The notes under the pieces: generated by a model
What the model saw: the letters and a program-made list of their open reading frames with translations, nothing else
The model's database searches: none
What the model was told of the DNA's origin: nothing
From: Octopus sinensis
Taxonomy: Eukaryota
Assembly: GCF_006345805.1 (NCBI RefSeq)
Contig: NC_043000.1
Span: 12,400,001-12,464,000 of the forward strand
Direction: 5' to 3'
DNA length: 64,000 nt
Translations under genes and position numbers: made by a program
Shown here: piece by piece, positions 2,990-64,000 of the stretch
Layout of the letters: every line of letters starts with the position of its first letter
Position numbering within the stretch: position 1 is the stretch's first letter

Positions 2990-3890
2990 ATATATGTATA
3001 TATACAAACACACACCCACACATATACACATAAATATCATATATGTACATATATATACATATATACACATATATACATACATATATATACATATATACAC
3101 ATACATACACACACACCACACACATATATATGTATACATATACATGTATATATATACACACATGTATATACATATATACATGTATATGTATATATATATT
3201 ACATACATATACGTGTATATATATACATACATATATACTAACATATATATGCATATGTATATATATATACATACATATATACTAACATATATTTGCATAT
3301 GTATATATATACATACATATATATATGTGTATATATATATACATATATAAATACATATATACACATATATATATACACACACATATATATATAATACACA
3401 CACACATATATATACATATATATATACATATATATATATACACATATACATACATATATATATATATATACACACATACATACATACACATATATATGTA
3501 CATGCTTACATATATATATACATACATACATTCATACATATATATATACATACATACATACATTCATACATATATATATACATACATACATTCATACATA
3601 TATTCATACATTCATACATACATTCATACATGCATACATATATTCATACATTCATACATGCATACATATATTCATACATTCATACATGCATACATATATT
3701 CATACATTCATACATGCACACATATATTCATACATTCATACATGCATACATATATTCATACATTCATACATGCATACATATATTCATACATTCATACATG
3801 CATACATATATTCATACATTCATACATGCATACATATATTCATACATTCATACATATATCTATATATATATATATATATATATATATGTA
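2990..3890. repeat. Compound (TA)/(CA) microsatellite with ~8 copies of a 28-bp unit (atacatatattcatacattcatacatgc)
   Basis: Directly visible; source of the YIYI/HTYI pseudo-ORFs. Confidence 0.95.
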
Positions 3891-3956
3891 GGTCCCGGGT
3901 TGAGTCGGGATTAACCACAGTAAATAAGGTACTCAATACATAGCAGAGTAAATTAA

Positions 3957-4086
3957 TTTATTATATAGAAGGAGCTTCTACAGGACTAGAACTGTTTCAT
4001 TCAAAAGAAATCATCAGGAAGCTTCCTGATGATTTCTTTTGAATGAAACAGTTCTAGTCCTGTAGAAGCTCCTTCTATATAATAAA
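3957..4086. repeat. Perfect 130-bp palindrome (65-bp arms, no spacer, centre AAGCTT); probable inverted Penelope-like pLTR fragment
   Basis: Checked base by base: position i pairs with 8043-i from 3957/4086 inward with no mismatch. Confidence 0.95.
4017..4073 (+). ncRNA. Minimal type-I hammerhead motif within a perfect palindrome (mirror copy on minus strand, 4026-3970)
   Basis: agcttc-CTGATGA-t ttc tttt gaa t-GAAA-cag ttctagtc ctg-TA-gaagct. Stem I agcttc/gaagct, stem III cag/ctg, GUA cleavage triplet; stem II weak (U-U plus 3 bp). Confidence 0.55.
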
Positions 4087-4124
4087 ATATATATATATAT
4101 ATACATAATAATTACTACATATAT

Positions 4125-4165
<41 letters not shown>

Positions 4166-4672
4166 CACACACACACACACATATATATATATGTATGGAT
4201 GTGTGTATTTGTGTGGTCATATGTGGTTGTATATTGACTATTTCTGTCAGAAAATTTTTACTCCAACACCTTCCCCTTTACTCCATTTGAAAAAAAAAAA
4301 AAAACCCAACTAATTTTTATCTTCCTGTCAGTGAAGAAGCAGTGTGTCAGTACCAACTGAAATATTATATATATATATACACAAAGAGATCATGAAAAGT
4401 TGCCAAATGTGGTAACAGAGCATTCAACATTGAAAAAAAAAAAAAAAAAACCAAAACTGCCTGATGATGAATCTGCCCTAAGATTATAGCGCCAGCTACT
4501 GAGTTGATTAGAGTTATCTGCTGAGTCCTTTTTTTTTCTAATCCAAAAATAGATGGCTGTAACTAAGAAAAGGCCGGTTGTAGATTGTGACTTTATATCT
4601 GGCCAGTTCTGGGCTTGTTCTTTCACAGCAGTGGAAGCCAGCTTACAGTGTATCTGTCTGGGAACGGATGGG

Positions 4673-4747
4673 TCAGTTAGGTAGCATGGTGACAAAACTG
4701 ACTGGGAACAAACCTCGTCTCTCAGGTTGTCCATCAATTTCACCTTC
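4673..4747 (-). CDS. ASAP1: ASAP terminal coding exon, SH3 C-terminal half: EGEIDGQPERRGLFPVSFVTMLPN*
   Basis: Acceptor ttttgtcatttcag|; TGA at 4675-4673. Matches ASAP1 IEGQPERKGVFPVSFV (from memory). Absent from the ORF track in this frame. Confidence 0.95.
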   Translation of the reverse strand, partial: EGEIDGQPERRGLFPVSFVTMLPN

Positions 4748-4789: not shown

Positions 4790-4912
4790 TTATTTTTATT
4801 ATGATGATGATGAGGAGGAGGCAGAGGAGGAGGAGGAGGAGGACGACGACGACGACGACGACAAGAAGAAGAAGAAGAAGAAGAAGAAGAAGAAGAAGAA
4901 GAAGAAGAAGAA
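4790..4912. repeat. Compound triplet repeat (TTA/GAT/GAG/GAC/GAA) at the 3' end of the last intron
   Basis: Directly visible. Confidence 0.95.
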
Positions 4913-7071: not shown

Positions 7072-7197
7072 CCACCACTCTTCCTCCTCTTCATGGAGGA
7101 CGATAATAATTTCTCCACCTTTAAATGTCAGCTCATCTTCATTATCAGCATCACAGTCATATTTAGCTCGACAGCGTCTCTTACCATTAGATTTTTT
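7072..7197 (-). CDS. ASAP1: ASAP SH3 domain, N-terminal exon (126 nt, phase 0 to 0): KKSNGKRRCRAKYDCDADNEDELTFKGGEIIIVLHEEEEEWW
   Basis: Acceptor gtttacttccag| and donor TGG|gtgagt. Canonical SH3 A.YD......ELTF..G..I......WW; the YDC.ADN.DELTF form is typical of ASAP SH3. Confidence 0.95.
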
Positions 7198-8670: not shown

Positions 8671-11600
8671 CTGCAGAGAGAAAAGACATTATTGTGACAG
8701 CAGCAGTTTAGAGATATCAAACAAACAAGATTTAGAACTGAATCTAGAATATAAAGTTATAATAATGTCTTAAATCCTGGCAGCCTGCATTTATTTAAGG
8801 AATAGCTGCCATTCTATTGAGCCTTGCCTAGTCACATATTATGTGTGTGTGTGTGTGCATGGAATAATTTTTGAAATGCACAACCATTGTTATTTCTTTA
8901 TTGCCCACAAGGGGATAAACATAGAGAGGACAAACAAGGACAGACAAAGGATTAAGTCGATTACATCCAACCCCAAAAGGATGAAAGGCAAAGTCGACCT
9001 TGGCGGAATTTTAACTCAGAACGTAGCGGCAGACGAAATACTGCTAAACATTTCGCCCAGAGTTCTAACATTTCTGCCAGCTCACCGCCTTATCATACAA
9101 TGCACAACCATTGTATGACGACCAGATAATCAATATTGCTGTGTCTGAGACTGCTGAAGTGAGCTATCATTGTAAGGAGACTCAATGGTCCTATCTAGCT
9201 GTGGACATGGGTTGTAGGTTATATAACTTTAGGTCAGCAGATGGTAGATATGAAAAACTGAAAAAAAAATGTATCTGTTTACATAGTGTTATGTATAGTG
9301 CTATATATTGAGCCTTTGGGTAGCTGAAGTAAGTTAGTTGTGACAAAAAACAAGTTAAGAAATTAAAAAGTTTTCTTAATCGAAAATTCTACTTCCAGTT
9401 TGGTAGCGCCTTAACTTCTGCATTTTGATGGAAAATAATACTGTCATCAGTCTTGTCCTCACAAATGGTTTGAAGAAAGTTACACTTTGAGTGAGCAACA
9501 TTTTAGATATATATCTCCCACTTTTGATCACAAGTATTTCATTTCAGTCTTCTATTTTCAATAAAATGGAAGTTTAAGACTACTCAGAAATAAGTTCCAG
9601 AAACAATGGTAAAATTACACACAGAGTGATTTCAGATGGAAAATGACTGCAATAATATTTTATAAGTACCAGCATCTTTATAATCTGATATCAATATTAG
9701 TTTCTGTTTTTATACCTATTAAACGCTATATTTACATCAAAAATAAATAGTTGCAGGTATGGTTGTGTGGTAAGAAGTTCACGTTGCAGCCAAATGACTT
9801 CAGGTTCAGTCCCACTATGTGGCATCTTGGGCAAGTGTCTTCTACTATAGCCCCAGGCCAACCAATGCTTTGTGAGCAGAATCGGTAGACAGAAATTGTG
9901 TGGAGGTCCATCATGAGTGTGTGTGTGTGTGTGGTGTGTGTGTGTGTATTGCTGTCTTGTCTTGACTTCACTTGATAATTGCAAACAAATGCCACTGCCA
10001 TGCAAGTGGTGTCCTGTTACCAATCTTTGATGAAACCCTGTCTGGTCATAGTGAAATATTACCTTACTTGGAAACAAGAGAAAGTTAGTGACAGGAAGAA
10101 CATCCAGCCATAGAAAGTTTGCCTCAATAAATTCCATCCAACCCATGCAAATTTTGGAAACATGGATGCTAAAGCAATGATGAATACAAATTATTATCTT
10201 GGAGTGCTACACTCTTGGAGTGGTTGGCGTTAGGAAGGGCATCCAGCTGTAGAAACTCTGCCAGATCAAGATTGGAACCTGGTGCAGCCATCTGGTTCAC
10301 CAGCCTTCAGTCAAATCATCCAGCCCATGCTAGCATGGAAAGCAGACGTTAAACAATGATGATGATGATTAAGTAAAAATCCTTATTACACTCTGATATC
10401 ATTACAGTTAAATGTATGAAATCATTTCTAACACAGACACAAAGCCAGAAACTTGGAGAAAGGAAAGTCAATTATATAAACTCTAGCAGTGGTATTTCAT
10501 TTTATTGCCTCCTGAAAGGATAAAAGACAAAGCTGACCTCAGTGAGATTTGATCTCATAACATAAAGAGTTAGAAAATCTACTGCAAAGCATTTTGTCCA
10601 AGACTAAAGATTTTTCCAATCCACTACCTGGAATCATAGTAATGTAAGACCGTCTTTGTAGCATAGAAGCTGAATCTTTTTTGCACGGTGGCACGTAAAA
10701 AGCACCATCCGAATGTGACTGATGCCAGCGCCACCTTGACTGGCTTTTGTGCCGGTGGCATGTAAAAAGCACCAACTGATCGTGGCCGTTGCCAGCCTCC
10801 CCTGGCACCTGTGCTGGTGGCACATACAAAGCACCCACTACACTCATGGAGTGGTTGGCATTAGGAAGGGCATCCAGCTGTAAAAACACTGCCAGATCAG
10901 ACTGGAGCCTGGTTCAGCCTCCTGGCTTCCCAGACCCCGGTCGAACCGTCCAACCCGTGCTAGCACAGAAAACGGATGTTAAATGATGATGATGATGATG
11001 AAAATAATTTACAGCTGACTGAACAACTTTGAACATTTCCACTTGCATCAGATAATGAATTCAAACATAGATTTTAGAAGCCAAAATGTATTTTGCATGA
11101 TCCAGATACAAACATACGTTAAGGAAAAGGGAAAACTGATGACATCATTTTGTCTAAAAAAGAACACAGGATATTCCCAGTCATATTTTGAATTTCTGTA
11201 TTTCTGTGTCTGTTCTTTTTTCCTTTTCCCAAGACAGACACTATAAAAAAATTGGTCAATTCAATAAACAGACTCAATCCCTATTTATGATAAATCACAT
11301 CACACTCTTCTTATTGCTTATTATTGTTGTCATGGGGTTCCTTGATTATCCCTTGATTATCCCTTTTTTTAACCTTTATATACTATGTATATCTCCCTTC
11401 CTTTTCATTCTATAGTATGTATACTTACTCTTATTTATTTATTTTACCATTTCATTATATGTACACCCCTACACTTTATGTCTGCCTTGTACTGTCCCTT
11501 CATCCTTTGCCCTGATGGCAAATAAATGAAATCATTATTATTATTATGTAATCTTATTTTTTTTGCTTGCTTTCACAGAACAGTAACACAGTTCGCTGGG

Positions 11601-35303: not shown

Positions 35304-35709
35304 GCTCTGTATCTCTATTCAACCTGTTTAGAAATAGAAGTCAACTCTCCCTCAAATTACAGTCCTGTAAACATTATGTTTTTAAAAAAAACAGACAGGA
35401 TGGTCATAACTGGAATGTCTTTGACTATTGATCTGCTTGATCAGGATTAACTGGAGAGTTGAACAAAGACTACAACAACAGGCTGTCTACAAATAAATGG
35501 GGAAACTAAATAGACAAGATAAGTATAAGAATGTTAAAGAATGACCTTTGGGTCAGGTAACAATGATCCCAACTAGTAGGTCTAATCGGCACTCTGTTGG
35601 TTTTGATGACAAGGATTCCGGCTGATTCGATTAACAGAACAGCCTGCTCATAAAATTAATATGCAAGTGGATGAGTATAGTACAGACATGTGTACCCTTA
35701 ATGTAATTC

Positions 35710-36126
35710 TCATTTCTTTATTGCTCACAAGGGGCTAAACATAGAGGGGACAAACAAGGACAGACAAAGGGATTAAGTCGATTATATCGACCCCAGTGTG
35801 TAACTGATACTTAATTTATTGACCCCAAATGGATGAAAGGCAAAGTCAACCTCGACGGAATTTGAGCTCAGAATGTAACGGCAGACGAAATACCTATTAC
35901 TTTACTACCCATAAGGGGCTAAACACAGAGAGGACAAACAAGGACAGACAAACAGATTAAGTCGATTATATCGACCCCAGTGGGTAAGTGGTACTTCTTT
36001 AATCGATCCCGAAAGGATGAAAGGCAATGTCGATCTCACCGGAATTTGAACTCAGAACGTAATGGCAGACAAAATACCGCTAAGCATTTCACCCAGCGTG
36101 CTAACGTTTCTGCCAGCTCACCGCCT
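35710..36126 (+). mobile_element. Retroposon family B, tandem partial copies
   Basis: ggggctaaacatagaggggacaaacaagg...ggatgaaaggcaaagtcgacctc...ctgccagctc block. Also near 5600-6060, 8890-9090, 11650-11880, 19030-19170 and 40040-40780. Confidence 0.75.
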
Positions 36127-36389
36127 TCAGCACAGACATGTGTACCCTTAATGTAATTCTCAGGGAGATTCAGTGTGACACAGAATGTGACAATACTGGC
36201 CCTTTGAATAACAGACATAACTCATTTTTGCCAGCTGAGTGGACTGGATCAACATGAAATAGAAAGTTTTGCTCAAGGTCACAACATGTCGACAGGAATC
36301 AAAATCGGGGCTGCAAGACAAATATGCTAACCACTAAGCCACACATCTTCACAACTACTAGGTGGACTTATCCTAGCATACAGGAATGA

Positions 36390-36610
36390 AAAGCCTAGCG
36401 AAAATGCCGGCGAAAAGTCTAGCAGTATTTTGTCTGCCGTTATGTTCTGAGTTCAAATTCCGCCAAGGTCGACTTTGCCTTTCATCCTATTGGGGTTGAT
36501 AAATGAAGTACCAGTTACACACTGGAGTCGATGTAATTGACTTAATCCCTTTGTCTGTCCTTGTTTGTCCCCTCTATGATAAGGTCCTTGTGGGCAATAA
36601 AGAAATAAGT
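36390..36610 (-). mobile_element. Retroposon family B, minus orientation
   Basis: Reverse complement of family B; another minus copy at 51780-52010. Confidence 0.75.
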
Positions 36611-45037: not shown

Positions 45038-45341
45038 TGTAGCAAGTAGCCATTTTCAAATAGTAGCGCCAATTTGTGGTAGCTGGCAATATGACATAAT
45101 GTCGTATTGCCGAAGAAATATGATTGTCGTTTTCCCATTAGTTGAAATAACTGCTCATATAGGAATTCTGAAAATTAGTTAAAGAATATTTTTATGTGAT
45201 TTCGATTCTTTAAAGTCAAGTTGAGTAGTTATATCAACCAATGGGAAAACAACAATCATATTTCTTTGGCAATATGACATTACGTCATATTGCCAGCTAC
45301 CACAAATTGGCGCTACCATTTGAAAATGGCTACACGCTACA
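45038..45341. mobile_element. Long-TIR MITE with TGT...ACA termini and 4-bp TSD (Ginger-like)
   Basis: 119-bp inverted arms (45038-45156 / 45223-45341); GAGG at 45034-45037 and 45342-45345. Confidence 0.75.
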
Positions 45342-46520: not shown

Positions 46521-46860
46521 AGGATATAAACAATACCGAACATGCATACGCAAGATATGCATTTTGCCAGTTTGTGGGCAGGCTGCGATTTATAGGCGTA
46601 AGAGAATATATTCTCATCAATTCACCTGGTGTTAAAACACTTAGAAGTCATAGACAAGTGAAATAACTTGCATCAGGTCTCGTTACATGAGCAGCAGACA
46701 TAATTATTTTGTCATTCTTGTGCTTTTCTATGGCTTCCAGATGTGTTAACATCAGGCAAATTGATGAGAATATATTCTTTTATGCCTATAAATCGCAGCC
46801 TGCCCATGAAATGGCAAAACACATAACTTACATAAGTGTGTTTGATATTGTTTATATCCT
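46521..46860. mobile_element. Foldback MITE with ~138-bp inverted arms
   Basis: 46521-46658 is inverted to 46723-46860; no clear TSD. Confidence 0.7.
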
Positions 46861-47802: not shown

Positions 47803-48191
47803 CATACGTACATACACACATATACGTATAATCATATATATTCATATATTCTGCAAGAGTGCTGGATGTAGTCAGATGGTTACTGGGGCTAGGGTTTTTC
47901 TATGAATAAGGCACACATTACTAACGATGCAGCAAATGTAAAGCCAGTCTTGGTATAGAGTGACGGAATGTGAACAAGAGAATGATGACGACGACGAGGA
48001 AGAGATGTTGAAGAAGAACATGAGCAAGAAGAGATGAAGAGGAAGGAGAAAAAAAACACAGGAAAGAAGGAAGAATGTTTTTAAATAAAAATAATAAAAA
48101 AATAACAATCAACACAAACAAAAAAAAACTTCACAAAATCAAAATGCAGGTAGCCAGAGCAATGGTTGTCTAGACGGACTGCAATCCTTAC

Positions 48192-48485
48192 CTACAGGAA
48201 CATGCATGGTATTGCGATTCTCAGGACTGGGTGGTTTGAACCGTGGAGGTGGCGGGTCTGAAGGCGTACGATAGTGACCCAAGAAAGAGGCATTGGGCTC
48301 GGACCAGTTCCTTGTATGGCCAGATGTTGGCGGTGGAACAGGGGCTGGTGGCTTCTTTTTGGGCGGCAGTGGAGGCAGACTTGGTCCGCCTGCACCGCTG
48401 TGATTATAGTTGTAGGAAGTGGTGTGCAGCAAGGTTCCGTTGGTCTGTGAAGGTGCCGCTCCACTGATGCTATAGTGATTCAAAC
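48192..48485 (-). CDS. ASAP1: ASAP-family ArfGAP, Pro-rich exon (294 nt, phase 1 to 1): (G)LNHYSISGAAP...PSLPPLPPKKKPPAPVPPPTSGHTRNWSEP...GHYRTPSDPPPP...TMHVPV
   Basis: Acceptor tttgcatcag| at 48488-48486 and donor GTAG|gtaagg at 48191; open frame. KKKPP..PPP..GH.R..S[ED]PP recalls vertebrate ASAP1 KKRPPPPPPGHKRTLSDPP (from memory). Most upstream exon I can find. Confidence 0.9.
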
Positions 48486-54498: not shown

Positions 54499-54613
54499 AT
54501 TTAAATTGGTCGTGTTGCCTACGTGTATATATATATGTATGTATACATTTGTATATGTAAGTATTCGTATGTTGTATATATATATATGTGCATTTATGTT
54601 ACTTTCTGCGTGT

Positions 54614-54672
54614 ATTCCACTGATGAGGCAAAGCATTTCTAAATGCAAAGTCAGAAATCCGGGATCTGGAAT
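54614..54672 (+). ncRNA. Type-I hammerhead ribozyme motif, copy 1 (predicted cleavage after 54666, AUC)
   Basis: attcca-CTGATGA-ggc aaa gcatt tcta aatgc aaa gtc a-GAAA-tccggga-TC-tggaat. Stem I attcca/tggaat, branched stem II, short near-palindromic stem III. One extra A precedes GAAA. Confidence 0.65.
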
Positions 54673-55106
54673 TATCCAGTAATTTTTTACTAGTTTTATT
54701 TTGTCTTTTTGTCTTCTCTCTTTGTGCTGTATGAGCATTTAATGTGGTTTTAGAGTCAGATCCTGGCTGCTATTTTCAGCATGGCGGTATCTCGTAGATA
54801 CCCTAAATTATAATTTTAATAATAATTATTACCTTTGAAGGTCTCTATTTCCATGCTGGTCACTTGATAAGATCGTTATTTAATTTAAATTTACGATCTT
54901 ATCCTTATTTATATAAATTTAGATTTATTTCATCACTGTATTTACTGTGGTGATGTTTAAACCATATCACACAATGGAGTTACGAAGCGGGCAATTTAAA
55001 CTGGTTGTGTTGCATACGTGCATATATATATATGTATACATTCGTATATGTAAGTATTTGTATGTTGTATGTATATATATGTGCATTTATGTTACTTTCT
55101 GCGTAT

Positions 55107-55165
55107 ATTCCACTGATGAGGCAAAGCATTTCTAAATGCAAAGCCAGAAATCTGGGATCTGGAAT
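55107..55165 (+). ncRNA. Type-I hammerhead ribozyme motif, copy 2 (predicted cleavage after 55159, AUC)
   Basis: attcca-CTGATGA-ggc aaa gcatt tcta aatgc aaa gcc a-GAAA-tctggga-TC-tggaat; same fold as copy 1. Confidence 0.65.
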
Positions 55166-55411
55166 TATCCAGTAATTTTTTACTAGTTATATTTTGTCTT
55201 TTTGTCTTCTCTCCTTGTGCTGTATGAGCATTTAATGTGGTTTTAGAGTCAGATCTTGGCTGCTATTTTCAGCATGGTGGTATCTTGTAGATACCCTAAG
55301 TAATAATTTTAATATGTGTGTGTGTGTGTGTGTGTGTGTGAGTGCAATATATCTAAATGTAAGTGTTTGAGTTTATATATGCGTGAGAGCTGTAACAGTA
55401 TTGTTAACAGC

Positions 55412-56949: not shown

Positions 56950-57641
56950 CATCATCATCATCATCGTTTAACGTCCGCTTTCCATGCTAGCATGGGTTGG
57001 ACGGTTCAACTGGGGTCTGGCAAGCCCGAAGGCTGCACCAGGCCAGTCAGATCTGGCAGTGTTTCTACAGCTGGATGCCCTTCCTAACGCCAACCACTCC
57101 GAGAGTGTAGAGGTTGATTTTATGTGCCACCGGCACAGGTGCCAGACGAGGCTGGCAGACGGCCACGCTCGGATGGTGTTTTTTATGTGCCACCGACACA
57201 GGTGCCAGACGAGGCTGGCAGACGGCCACGCTCGGATGGTGTTTTCTTATGTGTCACCGGCACAGGTGCCAGAGGAGGCTGGCGAACGGCCACGCTCGAA
57301 TGGTGTTTGTTACGTGCCCTCAGCATGGAGGCCAGTCGATGCGGTACTGGCTACGGTCACGTTCAGATGGTTTTCTTATGTGCCACCGACACTGGTACCA
57401 TAAAGGATACAAATTTCATTGATGTACATCTATTTTGATTTGGTTTTGATTTTGATTTTGATTTTCACTTGCCTCAACAGGTCTTCTCAAGTGTCACAAT
57501 AAGAAAGGTATGCACAGGTGGACTGACTACGTCCCAGGTAGGGGCCACGGGTTATGGCTTCACTAGTCTTGCCGGGTCTTCTCACGTACAGCATACTTCC
57601 ATAGGTCTCGGTCTCTAGTCATTTCCATGGTGAGACCTCAA
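56950..57641 (-). mobile_element. 5'-truncated RTE-type LINE: ORF end, long 3' UTR, (GAT)n tail
   Basis: Minus strand encodes GLTMEMTRDRDLWKYAVREKTRQD* (RTE C-terminus-like); the UTR contains three ~63-bp tandem units (57124-57310). Confidence 0.7.
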
Positions 57642-63384: not shown

Positions 63385-64000
63385 CATCATCATCATCGTT
63401 TAACGTCCGCTTTCCATGCTAGCAAGGGTTGGACGGTTTGACTGAGGACTGCCAAGCCAAATGGCTGCACCAGACTCTACTCTGATCTGGCAGAGTTTCT
63501 ACAGCTGGATGCCCTTCCTAATACCAACCAATCCAAGAGTGTAGTGGGTGCTTTTATGTGCCACTGGCACAAGAGCCAGTTTGGTGGTACTGGCAATGGG
63601 CACGCCCAAATGGTGCTTTTTACGTGCCACCTGCACAGGAGCCAGTCCAGCGGCACTGGCAACGACCTCGCTCAAATGTTTTTTCACATGCCACCAGCAC
63701 AAGTGCCAGTAAGGCAATGCAAGTAACGATTATGCTCGAATGGTGCTTTTTACGTACCACTGGCACGGAGGCCAGTTTGTTGCTCTGGCAACGATCATGC
63801 TCATATGGTACTGTTAGCATTCCACTAGCATGGATGCCAGTCATCGAATTTGATTTCGATTTCATTTACCTTAACAAGTCTTCACAAGCAGTGTTTAGTG
63901 TCCAATGAAGGGAAGATATGCATAAATGGGTTGGTTACACCCCTGGCATAGGTCACGAGGTTATGGTCTCACTTGGGCTTGTCAAGTCTTCTCAAGCACA
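63385..64000 (-). mobile_element. Same RTE-type 3' end, running out of the window
   Basis: catcatcgtttaacgtccgctttccatgctagc tail and ggatgcccttccta motif. Shorter copies near 10216-10370, 10640-11000, 13280-13640, 21810-21930, 34420-34600, 50420-50530, 52420-52640 and 58590-58870. Confidence 0.7.

What the first reader, a model, noticed from the sequence alone, without database searches (positions are those of the whole stretch)
3957..4086. Perfect 130-bp palindrome just 3' of the ASAP stop codon, with a hammerhead on each strand and a sequestered poly(A) signal
Seen: a zero-mismatch, spacer-less palindrome about 590 nt downstream of the stop. Each strand reads agcttc-CUGAUGA-(weak stem II)-GAAA-cag-uucuaguc-cug-UA-gaagcu. 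In the ASAP sense direction the predicted cut is after 3979, and the first AAUAAA after the stop (3962-3957) is the end of the 3' arm, so it is base-paired in the hairpin. Known: inverted pLTR duplications are typical of Penelope-like insertions; long perfect dsRNA is an ADAR and Dicer substrate, and coleoids edit heavily. Inference: the UTR could toggle between a 65-bp hairpin (ribozyme off, AAUAAA hidden) and the ribozyme fold, possibly influenced by editing. The perfect identity implies a recent origin, ongoing conversion or an assembly artefact.
Basis: partly seen in the sequence, partly recalled or inferred. Interest (0 to 1): 0.75.

Follow-up and report, generated by a model that had tools for sequence, protein, structure and literature searches.

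The report
Perfect palindrome of hammerhead-bearing retroelement ends
A real, perfect 130-bp palindrome downstream of an ASAP gene is most likely two back-to-back stubs of a ribozyme-carrying jumping gene inserted into a TA microsatellite; it is a fairly ordinary transposon scar, and folding calculations argue against an RNA switch.

Summary
Window 3957-4086 is a zero-mismatch, spacer-less 130-bp palindrome. It lies 587 nt past the stop codon of an ASAP1-type SH3 exon on the minus strand. Each strand carries a full hammerhead core with a 6-bp helix I, a 4-bp helix III and a weak helix II. The only canonical AAUAAA after the stop is the last six bases of the 3' arm.

The hammerhead resemblance is unlikely to be chance: a matching descriptor found 0-2 hits in 52 Mb of random sequence. 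It still reaches no Rfam hammerhead threshold, lacks G10.1-C11.1, and folds no better than shuffled sequence.

The palindrome and a 69-nt unique tail form a roughly 200-bp island inside a 1.2-kb (AT)n/(ATAC)n microsatellite. Head-to-head 5'-truncated copies, a ribozyme motif near the 3' end and a TA-microsatellite target match published Penelope-like element insertions.

The proposed ribozyme/hairpin toggle is not supported. The hairpin beats any ribozyme-containing fold by about 76 kcal/mol.

No other copies or orthologous loci could be retrieved, so the element family, the age and the reality of the assembly remain untested. Verdict: probably a new member of a known kind, of modest interest.

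The parts
3957..4086 (.). Perfect spacer-less 130-bp palindrome with centre 4021|4022 inside AAGCTT
   Evidence: The RNA hairpin is -106.5 kcal/mol, z = -23.8.
4022..4086 (+). Right arm. It reads in hammerhead sense on the + strand, with the 3' end pointing outward and ending in AATAAA next to (AT)n
3957..4021 (-). Left arm. It reads in hammerhead sense on the - strand (the ASAP sense), with the 3' end pointing outward and ending in AATAAA (3962-3957)
4020..4070 (+). Type-I hammerhead-like motif. Helix I pairs 4020-4025 with 4065-4070 (6 bp; 4020-4021 belong to the other arm). CUGAUGA is 4026-4032. Helix II is three pairs (4034:4043, 4035:4042, 4036:4041) plus U4033/U4044 unpaired. GAAA is 4045-4048. 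Helix III pairs 4048-4051 with 4060-4063 and has loop UUCUAGUC. The predicted cut is after A4064.
   Evidence: Chance rate. No Rfam hammerhead threshold is reached.
3973..4023 (-). Mirror-image hammerhead-like motif on the minus strand, with the predicted cut after 3979
   Evidence: plus symmetry of the palindrome
3957..3962 (-). The only canonical AAUAAA downstream of the ASAP stop. It forms the base of the hairpin.
3888..3956 (-). 69-nt non-repetitive stretch between the left arm and the (AT)n tract. It may be an element tail on one side only. It contains a small CCCG/CGGG hairpin and a GU-rich stretch downstream of the AAUAAA.
Evidence: (unique in the window).
3022..3887 (.). Compound (AT)n/(ATAC)n microsatellite on the left side of the island
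4087..4189 (.). (TA)n/(ATATAC)n microsatellite on the right side of the island
4673..4747 (-). Coding part of the last ASAP exon (EGEIDGQPERRGLFPVSFVTMLPN*), with stop at 4675-4673
7072..7197 (-). Preceding ASAP SH3 exon ([42 protein letters not shown]). Boundaries are approximate and read from splice-like AG/GT.

Best explanation
What it is. The palindrome is a young scar of a hammerhead-carrying retroelement of the Penelope-like / animal retrozyme class. It consists of two extremely 5'-truncated copies of the last ~65 nt of the element RNA, containing the ribozyme motif, 22 further nt and AAUAAA. The copies are joined head to head with their 3' ends pointing outward. One side carries an extra 69-nt tail. 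The whole unit sits inside a (TA)n-rich microsatellite about 0.6 kb past the ASAP stop codon.

How it arose (inferred). The element's endonuclease nicked both target strands and both 3'-OH ends primed reverse transcription of the same RNA. A single cDNA jumping back on itself would give the same result. The two cDNAs were joined at the self-complementary AGCT that forms the start of helix I. That junction explains three features: the palindrome has no spacer, the arms are identical, and helix I is restored across the centre.

What it does now. It is probably not a device. In any transcript crossing it, in either direction, the antisense arm is made first. The sense arm then zips onto it into a 65-bp perfect hairpin, which locks the weak hammerhead off and buries the AAUAAA. 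Any effect on ASAP would be that of a long perfect dsRNA in the 3' UTR or 3' flank: an editing, dicing or dsRNA-binding-protein substrate, and a masked poly(A) signal.

Shown versus inferred. Shown: the sequence anatomy, the microsatellite context, the non-chance hammerhead resemblance and the folding energies. Inferred: the retroelement identity, the double-priming origin, the youth, and all RNA-level consequences.
For: 1. The palindrome is perfect and spacer-less.
2. The complete hammerhead core plus helices I and III occurs only in the two arms of the window. It is very rare in random sequence: 0, 1 and 2 hits per 52 Mb for helix I of 6, at least 5 and at least 4 bp. That gives roughly 1e-6 per 65-nt arm.
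3. Orientation: the hammerhead-sense 3' ends point outward and the truncated 5' ends meet at the centre.
4. The palindrome plus the 69-nt tail form a ~200-bp island inside a 1.17-kb (AT)n/(ATAC)n array, with (AT)n abutting both sides.
5. Literature:
   - PLE insertions are heavily 5'-truncated, often carry an inverted truncated copy alongside, carry a hammerhead in the pLTR near the 3' end, show a one-sided tail and prefer (TA)n microsatellites (PMC8557442).
   - Paired hammerheads on opposite strands 100-700 bp apart have been reported (PMC4209133).
   - A purified PLE protein cleaves and extends both target strands in vitro (PMC11167929).
   - Animal retrozymes are proposed to be non-autonomous PLE derivatives (bioRxiv 10.64898/2026.07.22.740005).
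6. A U-U mismatch at the base of helix II exists in an abundant natural retrozyme hammerhead that still cleaves (HHR_Amex2; PMC7229834).
7. A second, unrelated hammerhead-like motif lies in each of two ~300-nt direct repeats bounded by microsatellites at 54.5-55.3 kb. Such elements therefore seem to exist in this genome.
8. Energetics: hairpin -109 kcal/mol against -33 with the hammerhead enforced.
Against: - No other copy of the arm or tail exists in the window. None could be retrieved from any collection, so repeat-family status is unproven.
- There is no RT/GIY-YIG coding remnant next to it.
- The motif does not look like the published metazoan PLE min-hammerhead. That type has a long helix II with G10.1-C11.1, a bulge after A9, and little or no helix III (PMC4209133).
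- It reaches no Rfam hammerhead threshold. The best result is a partial Hammerhead_3 match of 14.5 bits against a gathering score of 48.5.
- It folds no better than shuffles, z = 0.04.
- Two independent cDNAs ending at exactly the same base is not the usual outcome. PLE inverted copies are normally unequal in length.
- The 69-nt tail is longer than the published 30-40 bp.
Confidence: 0.5

Rival explanations
1. In situ inverted duplication. A single arm was already present, itself possibly an old retroelement fragment together with the 69-nt flank. A replication template switch or fold-back repair event copied it in reverse. The switch points were the palindromic AAGCTT at one end and the palindromic TATATA/(TA)n at the other.
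For: Both boundaries carry short self-complementary sequence: AGCT at the centre and TATATA next to (TA)n at the outer edge. The arms are exactly equal in length and identical, which a copy-back event gives automatically. The flanks are asymmetric, with 69 unique nt on one side only. Template-switch events that create perfect hairpins are established knowledge, recalled from memory and not checked here.
Against: It does not explain why the copied segment carries a hammerhead motif ending in AAUAAA with the microsatellite context typical of PLE insertions, unless the first arm was itself such an insertion. Typical template-switch tracts are shorter than 65 nt (from memory).
Confidence: 0.25
2. 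Assembly or polishing artefact. Only one arm, or neither, exists in the animal, and the inverted copy was created during assembly of a difficult microsatellite region.
For: Perfect identity. The centre is a HindIII site. The region is flanked by more than 1 kb of microsatellite. PLE-type structures are said to cause assembly problems (PMC8557442).
Against: Fold-back read chimeras give long arms that run to a contig end (from memory). Here the arms are only 65 bp and are bounded by different sequence on each side. The window has no N and runs through about 0.9 kb of microsatellite, which suggests long reads. The extra 2 bp of helix I across the centre fit a biological junction at AGCT.
Confidence: 0.08
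3. Functional 3'-UTR device. The RNA toggles between the hairpin (ribozyme off, AAUAAA hidden) and the hammerhead fold, perhaps tuned by A-to-I editing, to set ASAP 3'-end choice or stability.
For: The core is complete and the motif is unlikely to be chance. The AAUAAA is the only canonical signal and is buried. A natural hammerhead with a U-U pair at the base of helix II still cleaves. Hammerheads in rodent Clec2 3' UTRs are known (from memory).
Against: The difference in free energy is about 76 kcal/mol in favour of the hairpin. Helix II is worth -0.1 kcal/mol, and a competing hairpin sequesters helix I even in the isolated arm. The motif has z = 0.04 against shuffles. Promiscuous editing of a perfect duplex would also alter essential core adenosines; 44 of the 130 bases are A (then inference). 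A perfect, mutation-free palindrome points to youth, not to conserved function.
Confidence: 0.03
4. A small foldback or MITE-type DNA transposon, or a hairpin small-RNA gene, whose hammerhead resemblance is coincidental.
For: Another long hairpin element lies in the same window at 45038-45341, with 120-nt arms at 92% identity. Sub-threshold Rfam matches to miRNA hairpin models were found; the best is mir-1781 at 54 bits against a gathering score of 68.
Against: No target-site duplication can be read: TTAA on the left against ATAT on the right. Full-length perfect self-complementarity without an internal loop is unusual for MITEs. The miRNA matches are driven by the generic long stem. A chance hammerhead in a 65-nt arm is expected at about 1e-6.
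Confidence: 0.07

Closest known systems
Penelope-like element (PLE) insertions with pseudo-LTR hammerheads (Cervera & de la Pena 2014, PMC4209133; Craig et al. 2021, PMC8557442; PMC11167929)
   Same: Extreme 5' truncation. Inverted copies joined at their 5' ends. Hammerhead motif near the 3' end. One-sided tail. (TA)n microsatellite target. Both target strands can prime reverse transcription.
   Different: No RT/EN remnant is present. The arms are only 65 nt and exactly equal in length. The hammerhead has a short helix II without G10.1-C11.1 and a 4-bp helix III with an 8-nt loop, unlike the metazoan PLE min-hammerhead. The tail is 69 nt, against the published 30-40. Sequence relationship to any PLE is untested.
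Animal non-LTR retrozymes with type-I hammerheads, including axolotl HHR_Amex2 (Cervera & de la Pena 2020, PMC7229834; bioRxiv 10.64898/2026.07.22.740005)
   Same: Type-I topology, a 6-bp helix I, low GC content, and a U-U mismatch at the base of helix II, as in HHR_Amex2, which still self-cleaves.
   Different: Retrozymes are head-to-tail tandem repeats of about 170-400 bp. This is a head-to-head pair of 65-nt stubs. Helix III here is longer. No circular-RNA unit can be defined.
Hammerheads in mammalian 3' UTRs (rodent Clec2 discontinuous hammerhead; recalled from memory, not checked here)
   Same: A hammerhead-type motif lies downstream of a stop codon, where cleavage would remove the poly(A) tail.
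   Different: The Clec2 ribozyme is conserved, active and not buried in a perfect hairpin. Here the motif is weak and thermodynamically locked off.
Inverted-repeat dsRNA in 3' UTRs (for example inverted Alu pairs) and hairpins created by template switching (recalled from memory)
   Same: A long intramolecular duplex in a 3' UTR or flank is a potential ADAR, Dicer or dsRNA-binding-protein substrate. The perfect hairpin was created in one mutational step.
   Different: The duplex is shorter (65 bp), perfect and has a 4-nt apex. Expression and editing are unknown.

Membership tests
Hammerhead ribozyme (type I) | Conserved core: C3 U4 G5 A6 N7 G8 A9, G12 A13 A14, A15.1-U16.1, H17 | tested here: met
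   CUGAUGA at 4026-4032, GAAA at 4045-4048, U4063 and A4064
Hammerhead ribozyme (type I) | Helices I and III flank the core in type-I order | tested here: met
   Helix I has 6 bp (4020-4025 with 4065-4070). Helix III has 4 bp including A15.1-U16.1, with an 8-nt loop.
Hammerhead ribozyme (type I) | Stable helix II closed by G10.1-C11.1 | tested here: not met
   U4033 and U4044 form a mismatch, followed by only U-A, U-A and C-G with a UUUU loop. The stem alone is worth -0.1 kcal/mol. There is a precedent for U-U at this position in the active HHR_Amex2.
Hammerhead ribozyme (type I) | Scores above the curated threshold of an Rfam hammerhead model | tested here: not met
   No gathering-level hit in the window. 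No hammerhead hit at E<=10 on the whole palindrome. On a single arm, only a partial Hammerhead_3 match of 14.5 bits against 48.5, E = 0.71.
Hammerhead ribozyme (type I) | The catalytic fold is the favoured fold of the isolated motif | tested here: inconclusive
   The hammerhead fold is -7.3 kcal/mol against an MFE of -7.6, with z = 0.04 against shuffles. With the 3' tail attached, a competing hairpin wins (-9.2) and P(helix I) is about 0.11.
Hammerhead ribozyme (type I) | Self-cleavage at H17, and covariation among family members | not testable with these tools
   No wet assay is possible, and no other copies could be retrieved.
Penelope-like element insertion | RT plus GIY-YIG ORF, or sequence similarity to a PLE or pLTR consensus | not testable with these tools
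   No long non-repetitive ORF lies next to the palindrome. That is expected for 65-nt stubs. No eukaryotic repeat library or source genome was available, and the supplement with consensus sequences is not held.
Penelope-like element insertion | 5'-truncated copies in inverted (head-to-head) arrangement with 3' ends outward | tested here: met
   The orientation of the hammerhead-sense strands is outward.
Penelope-like element insertion | Insertion into a microsatellite, typically (TA)n | tested here: met
   The island 3888-4086 lies inside the (AT)n/(ATAC)n array 3022-4189.
Penelope-like element insertion | Metazoan PLE min-hammerhead architecture: helix II of 6-8 bp with G10.1-C11.1, an extra base after A9, helix III absent or short and palindromic | tested here: not met
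   Helix II has 3 bp plus a U-U mismatch. Helix III has 4 bp with an 8-nt loop. Only the partial palindromy ACAG..CUAG..CUGU fits.
Penelope-like element insertion | Multi-copy family in the host genome | not testable with these tools
   The arm is unique within the 64-kb window. No genome of the source organism was accessible.
MITE / foldback DNA transposon | Terminal inverted repeats flanked by a target-site duplication | tested here: not met
   The flanks TTAA|...|ATAT are not a direct repeat.
C/D box snoRNA | C box RUGAUGA and D box CUGA next to a terminal stem | tested here: not met
   UGAUGA and a terminal stem are present, but the 3' box reads CUGU. SNORD102 scores 19.3 bits against 47.
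microRNA precursor | Match to a curated miRNA family at gathering score | tested here: not met
   The best match is mir-1781 at 54.1 bits against 68. The matches are driven by the generic long stem.

The most novel reading that the evidence does not exclude
The perfect hairpin at the end of the ASAP 3' UTR is used by the animal. Heavy A-to-I editing or helicase action would open the 65-bp stem. That would expose the only canonical AAUAAA and, in a fraction of molecules, allow the weak hammerhead to cut 17 nt upstream of it (cut after 3979, AAUAAA at 3962-3957). A retroelement scar would then act as an editing-dependent 3'-end switch.
Probability: 0.03. Interest if true: 0.8.

Novelty: new member of a known kind. 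Interest (0 to 1): 0.3.

Why it matters
If the retroelement reading is right, this is a very clean natural example of the inverted, double-primed insertion products of Penelope-like or retrozyme elements. It has equal arms, no spacer and a junction at a 4-nt self-complementary microhomology, and so could inform how these poorly understood elements integrate.

It also places a 65-bp perfect dsRNA, with the only canonical poly(A) signal inside it, at the end of a conserved signalling gene. In an animal with heavy RNA editing, that would be a convenient natural reporter for editing, dicing and poly(A)-site masking.

A perfect 130-bp palindrome is expected to be unstable (established knowledge). 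The site is therefore likely to be polymorphic and would be useful as a marker of recent element activity. None of this requires the ribozyme to work.

Tried and rejected
1. Orthologous or allelic loci through the protein databases. The 66-aa SH3 query found one unrelated 61%-identical ENA fragment, so no comparative locus could be fetched.
2. Degenerate hammerhead-arm pattern in viral and metagenome collections. This gave 1 and 6 hits. All looked like chance matches, with GA-rich, apparently coding sequence around them and no 6-nt complement for helix I.
3. PLE consensus sequences in the supplement of PMC8557442. They are not held.
4. Literature on hammerheads in cephalopods. Nothing specific was found.
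5. Rfam at gathering and at E<=10. No hammerhead family passes. The miRNA, snoRNA and plastid 3'-UTR hits are generic hairpin or C-box look-alikes and were rejected.
6. tRNA-like reading of the 69-nt left flank (GGTTGAGTCGGGA resembles a B box). ARAGORN finds nothing in the window. A 13-nt match to 54.9 kb is chance.
7. Target-site duplication. None is readable.
8. Six-frame Pfam scan of the whole window for RT/EN remnants. The fragments were prepared but not submitted.
9. Relationship between the palindrome arm and the second hammerhead-like element at 54.6 kb. There is no similarity beyond the core.

Full report
OBSERVATION

Window 3957-4086 is identical to its own reverse complement: 130 bp, no mismatch, no spacer. 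The centre lies between 4021 and 4022 inside AAGCTT. Allowing one mismatch, it runs from 3954 to 4089. All other perfect palindromes in the 64 kb have half-lengths of 28 or less; they are presumably simple-repeat tracts, but I did not read them.

Transcribed from either strand, the region folds into a 65-bp hairpin with a 4-nt apex, at -106.5 kcal/mol and z = -23.8.

The minus strand encodes the C-terminal SH3 domain of an ASAP-type protein in two exons. The joined peptide matches PDB ASAP1 SH3 chains at E about 1e-23. The stop codon is at 4675-4673, 587 nt from the palindrome edge. The only canonical AATAAA on that strand between position 2000 and the stop is 3962-3957, the last six bases of the 3' arm.

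THE HAMMERHEAD MOTIF

Each strand reads AGCUUC / CUGAUGA / UUUC-UUUU-GAAU / GAAA / CAG-UUCUAGUC-CUG / U-A / GAAGCU, which is + strand 4020-4070.
- The catalytic core is complete.
- Helix I has 6 bp.
- Helix III has 4 bp (counting A15.1-U16.1) and an 8-nt loop with a central CUAG.
- Helix II is only U-A, U-A, C-G, closed by a U-U mismatch where G10.1-C11.1 normally sits.

I wrote a descriptor just loose enough to accept this sequence. In the real window it hits only the two arms, even with helix I relaxed to 4 bp. In 52 Mb of first-order Markov sequence with the window's composition, it hit 0, 1 and 2 times for helix I of 6, at least 5 and at least 4 bp. That is roughly 1e-6 per 65-nt arm.

The evidence for a working, canonical ribozyme is poor:
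- No Rfam family reaches its threshold in the window.
- No hammerhead model appears at E<=10 on the whole palindrome.
- A single arm gives only a partial Hammerhead_3 match of 14.5 bits against a gathering score of 48.5.
- The 51-nt motif folds no better than shuffles, z = 0.04.
- The hammerhead fold (-7.3 kcal/mol) is not the MFE (-7.6), and helix II alone is worth -0.1.
- With its natural 3' tail, the arm prefers a hairpin (UAGAAG-CUC-CUUCUA) that captures the 3' strand of helix I. P(helix I) is then about 0.11.

One point softens this. An abundant axolotl retrozyme hammerhead, HHR_Amex2, also has a U-U mismatch at the base of helix II and still cleaves: 22% in one hour as a monomer, and more as a dimer (PMC7229834).

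THE TOGGLE

In a 170-nt transcript the hairpin state is -109 kcal/mol. The best structure with the hammerhead helices enforced is -33.

The 5' strand of helix I lies at the apex of the hairpin, with two of its bases in the other arm. The antisense arm is always transcribed first. Each base of the sense arm therefore finds its partner as it emerges, and I see no kinetic window for the ribozyme fold (inference).

The AAUAAA is buried in silico. Forcing it single-stranded costs 6.4 kcal/mol, and P(all six bases unpaired) is about 3e-5.

Promiscuous editing of a perfect duplex would deaminate core adenosines as readily as any other A; 44 of the 130 bases are A. Editing is therefore not an obvious way to switch the ribozyme on (inference). 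I rate the switch hypothesis at about 3%.

CONTEXT AND ORIGIN

Tandem Repeats Finder shows one compound (AT)n/(ATAC)n array from 3022 to 4189. It is interrupted only by 3888-4086, which is 69 unique nt plus the palindrome. (AT)n abuts both sides.

In each arm the hammerhead-sense strand runs outward and ends in UAUAUAAUAAA. The truncated 5' ends meet at the centre. The junction is the self-complementary AGCT. The two bases contributed by the opposite arm complete helix I, which suggests the parental RNA already read AGCUUC there.

This anatomy matches published descriptions of Penelope-like element insertions:
- High 5' truncation, an inverted 5'-truncated copy immediately adjacent, hammerheads in the pseudo-LTR near the 3' end, a tail on one side only, and a strong bias for (TA)n and other microsatellites (PMC8557442).
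- Paired hammerheads on opposite strands in Schistosoma (PMC4209133).
- A purified PLE protein that cleaves and extends both target strands, unlike R2 or L1 (PMC11167929).
- Animal retrozymes proposed to be non-autonomous PLE derivatives (bioRxiv 10.64898/2026.07.22.740005).

I therefore read the palindrome as two reverse transcripts of the last ~65 nt of one hammerhead-bearing RNA, primed from both target strands (or one cDNA copied back on itself) and joined at AGCT.

Zero differences in 65 nt, compared with 5% divergence between the two direct repeats of the element at 54.5 kb, argues that the event is recent or that the arms are homogenised.

WEAK POINTS
- I could not show that the arm is repetitive. 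It is unique in the window.
- The protein collections do not contain this animal.
- Pattern scans of viral and metagenomic DNA gave only what looked like chance matches.
- The motif's architecture differs from the published metazoan PLE min-hammerhead.
- Exact equality of the two arms is more naturally produced by a copy-back event than by two independent cDNAs.
- The tail is 69 nt, against the published 30-40.

The main rival, at 0.25, is an in situ template-switch or fold-back duplication of a pre-existing single arm. Its switch points would be the palindromic AAGCTT and TATATA.

An assembly artefact (0.08) is not excluded. However, the arms are short, they are bounded by different sequence on each side, and the assembly reads through about 0.9 kb of microsatellite without gaps.

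MITE, snoRNA and miRNA readings each failed a defining feature.

A SECOND HAMMERHEAD-LIKE ELEMENT

A looser descriptor found a second motif on the + strand at 54614-54672 and 55107-55165. It has a 6-bp helix I, a long helix II beginning with G10.1 and a near-palindromic short helix III. It also has one extra A before G12.

One copy lies in each of two ~300-nt direct repeats that are 95% identical and about 190 nt apart. The unit is bounded by (TA)n and (TG)n tracts. The chance rate for this descriptor is about 0.02 per window. No Rfam hammerhead hit appears at E<=5.

The architecture looks like a small pLTR-internal-pLTR or retrozyme-type element. It makes the presence of hammerhead-bearing, microsatellite-seeking retroelements in this genome more credible. 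It is not sequence-related to the palindrome arm.

VERDICT

The regulatory toggle is not supported. This is most likely a new member of a known kind, of modest interest (0.3). The decisive tests are genome-wide copy searches, spanning long reads, orthologous empty sites, 3'-end and editing data, and a simple in vitro cleavage assay.

Noticed in passing
window 54521-55316 (+), motifs at 54614-54672 and 55107-55165: A second, unrelated hammerhead-like motif: AUUCCA-CUGAUGA-long helix II-A-GAAA-UC(C/U)GGGA-UC|UGGAAU. One copy lies in each of two ~300-nt direct repeats (95% identical, about 190 nt apart). The unit is bounded by (TA)n and (TG)n microsatellites and looks like a small pLTR or retrozyme-type element. 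Chance rate is about 0.02 per window. There is no Rfam hit, and an extra A before G12 makes it non-canonical.
   Followed up: partly
window 45038-45341: A ~304-bp near-palindromic element with 120-nt arms (92% complementary) and a 64-nt spacer. It resembles a foldback or MITE element and has no other copy in the window.
   Followed up: partly
window 46521-46860 and 35709-36610: Further long imperfect inverted repeats: 138-nt arms at 83% with a 64-nt spacer, and 185-202-nt arms at 82-88% with a 315-531-nt spacer. They were not characterised.
   Followed up: no
window 4062-4078 (+) and mirror 3965-3981: Each arm contains its own small hairpin, UAGAAG-CUC-CUUCUA. It competes with hammerhead helix I for the GAAGCU strand.
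   Followed up: yes
window 4803-4912: A long (GAT)n/(GAG)n/(GAA)n trinucleotide repeat lies in the intron just upstream of the last ASAP coding exon.
   Followed up: no
window 10539-10889 (-), 56984-57403 (+), 63558-63908 (+), tandem at 57120-57342: Dispersed repeat copies share pseudo-peptides such as LQLDALPNANHS and GAFYVPPAQ. One copy contains an internal 63-64-nt tandem triplication. They are probably an abundant SINE-like family.
   Followed up: no
window 48139-48483 (-): A proline-rich ORF (PPLPPKKKPPAPVPPP...) on the ASAP strand, probably the proline-rich exon of the same gene.
   Followed up: no
window 3888-3956 (-): Downstream of the AAUAAA in ASAP sense lies a GU-rich stretch (UGUGGUU, about 45 nt away), followed by a small CCCG/CGGG hairpin. 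This is a plausible poly(A)-site context that may belong to the inserted element and not to ASAP.
   Followed up: no
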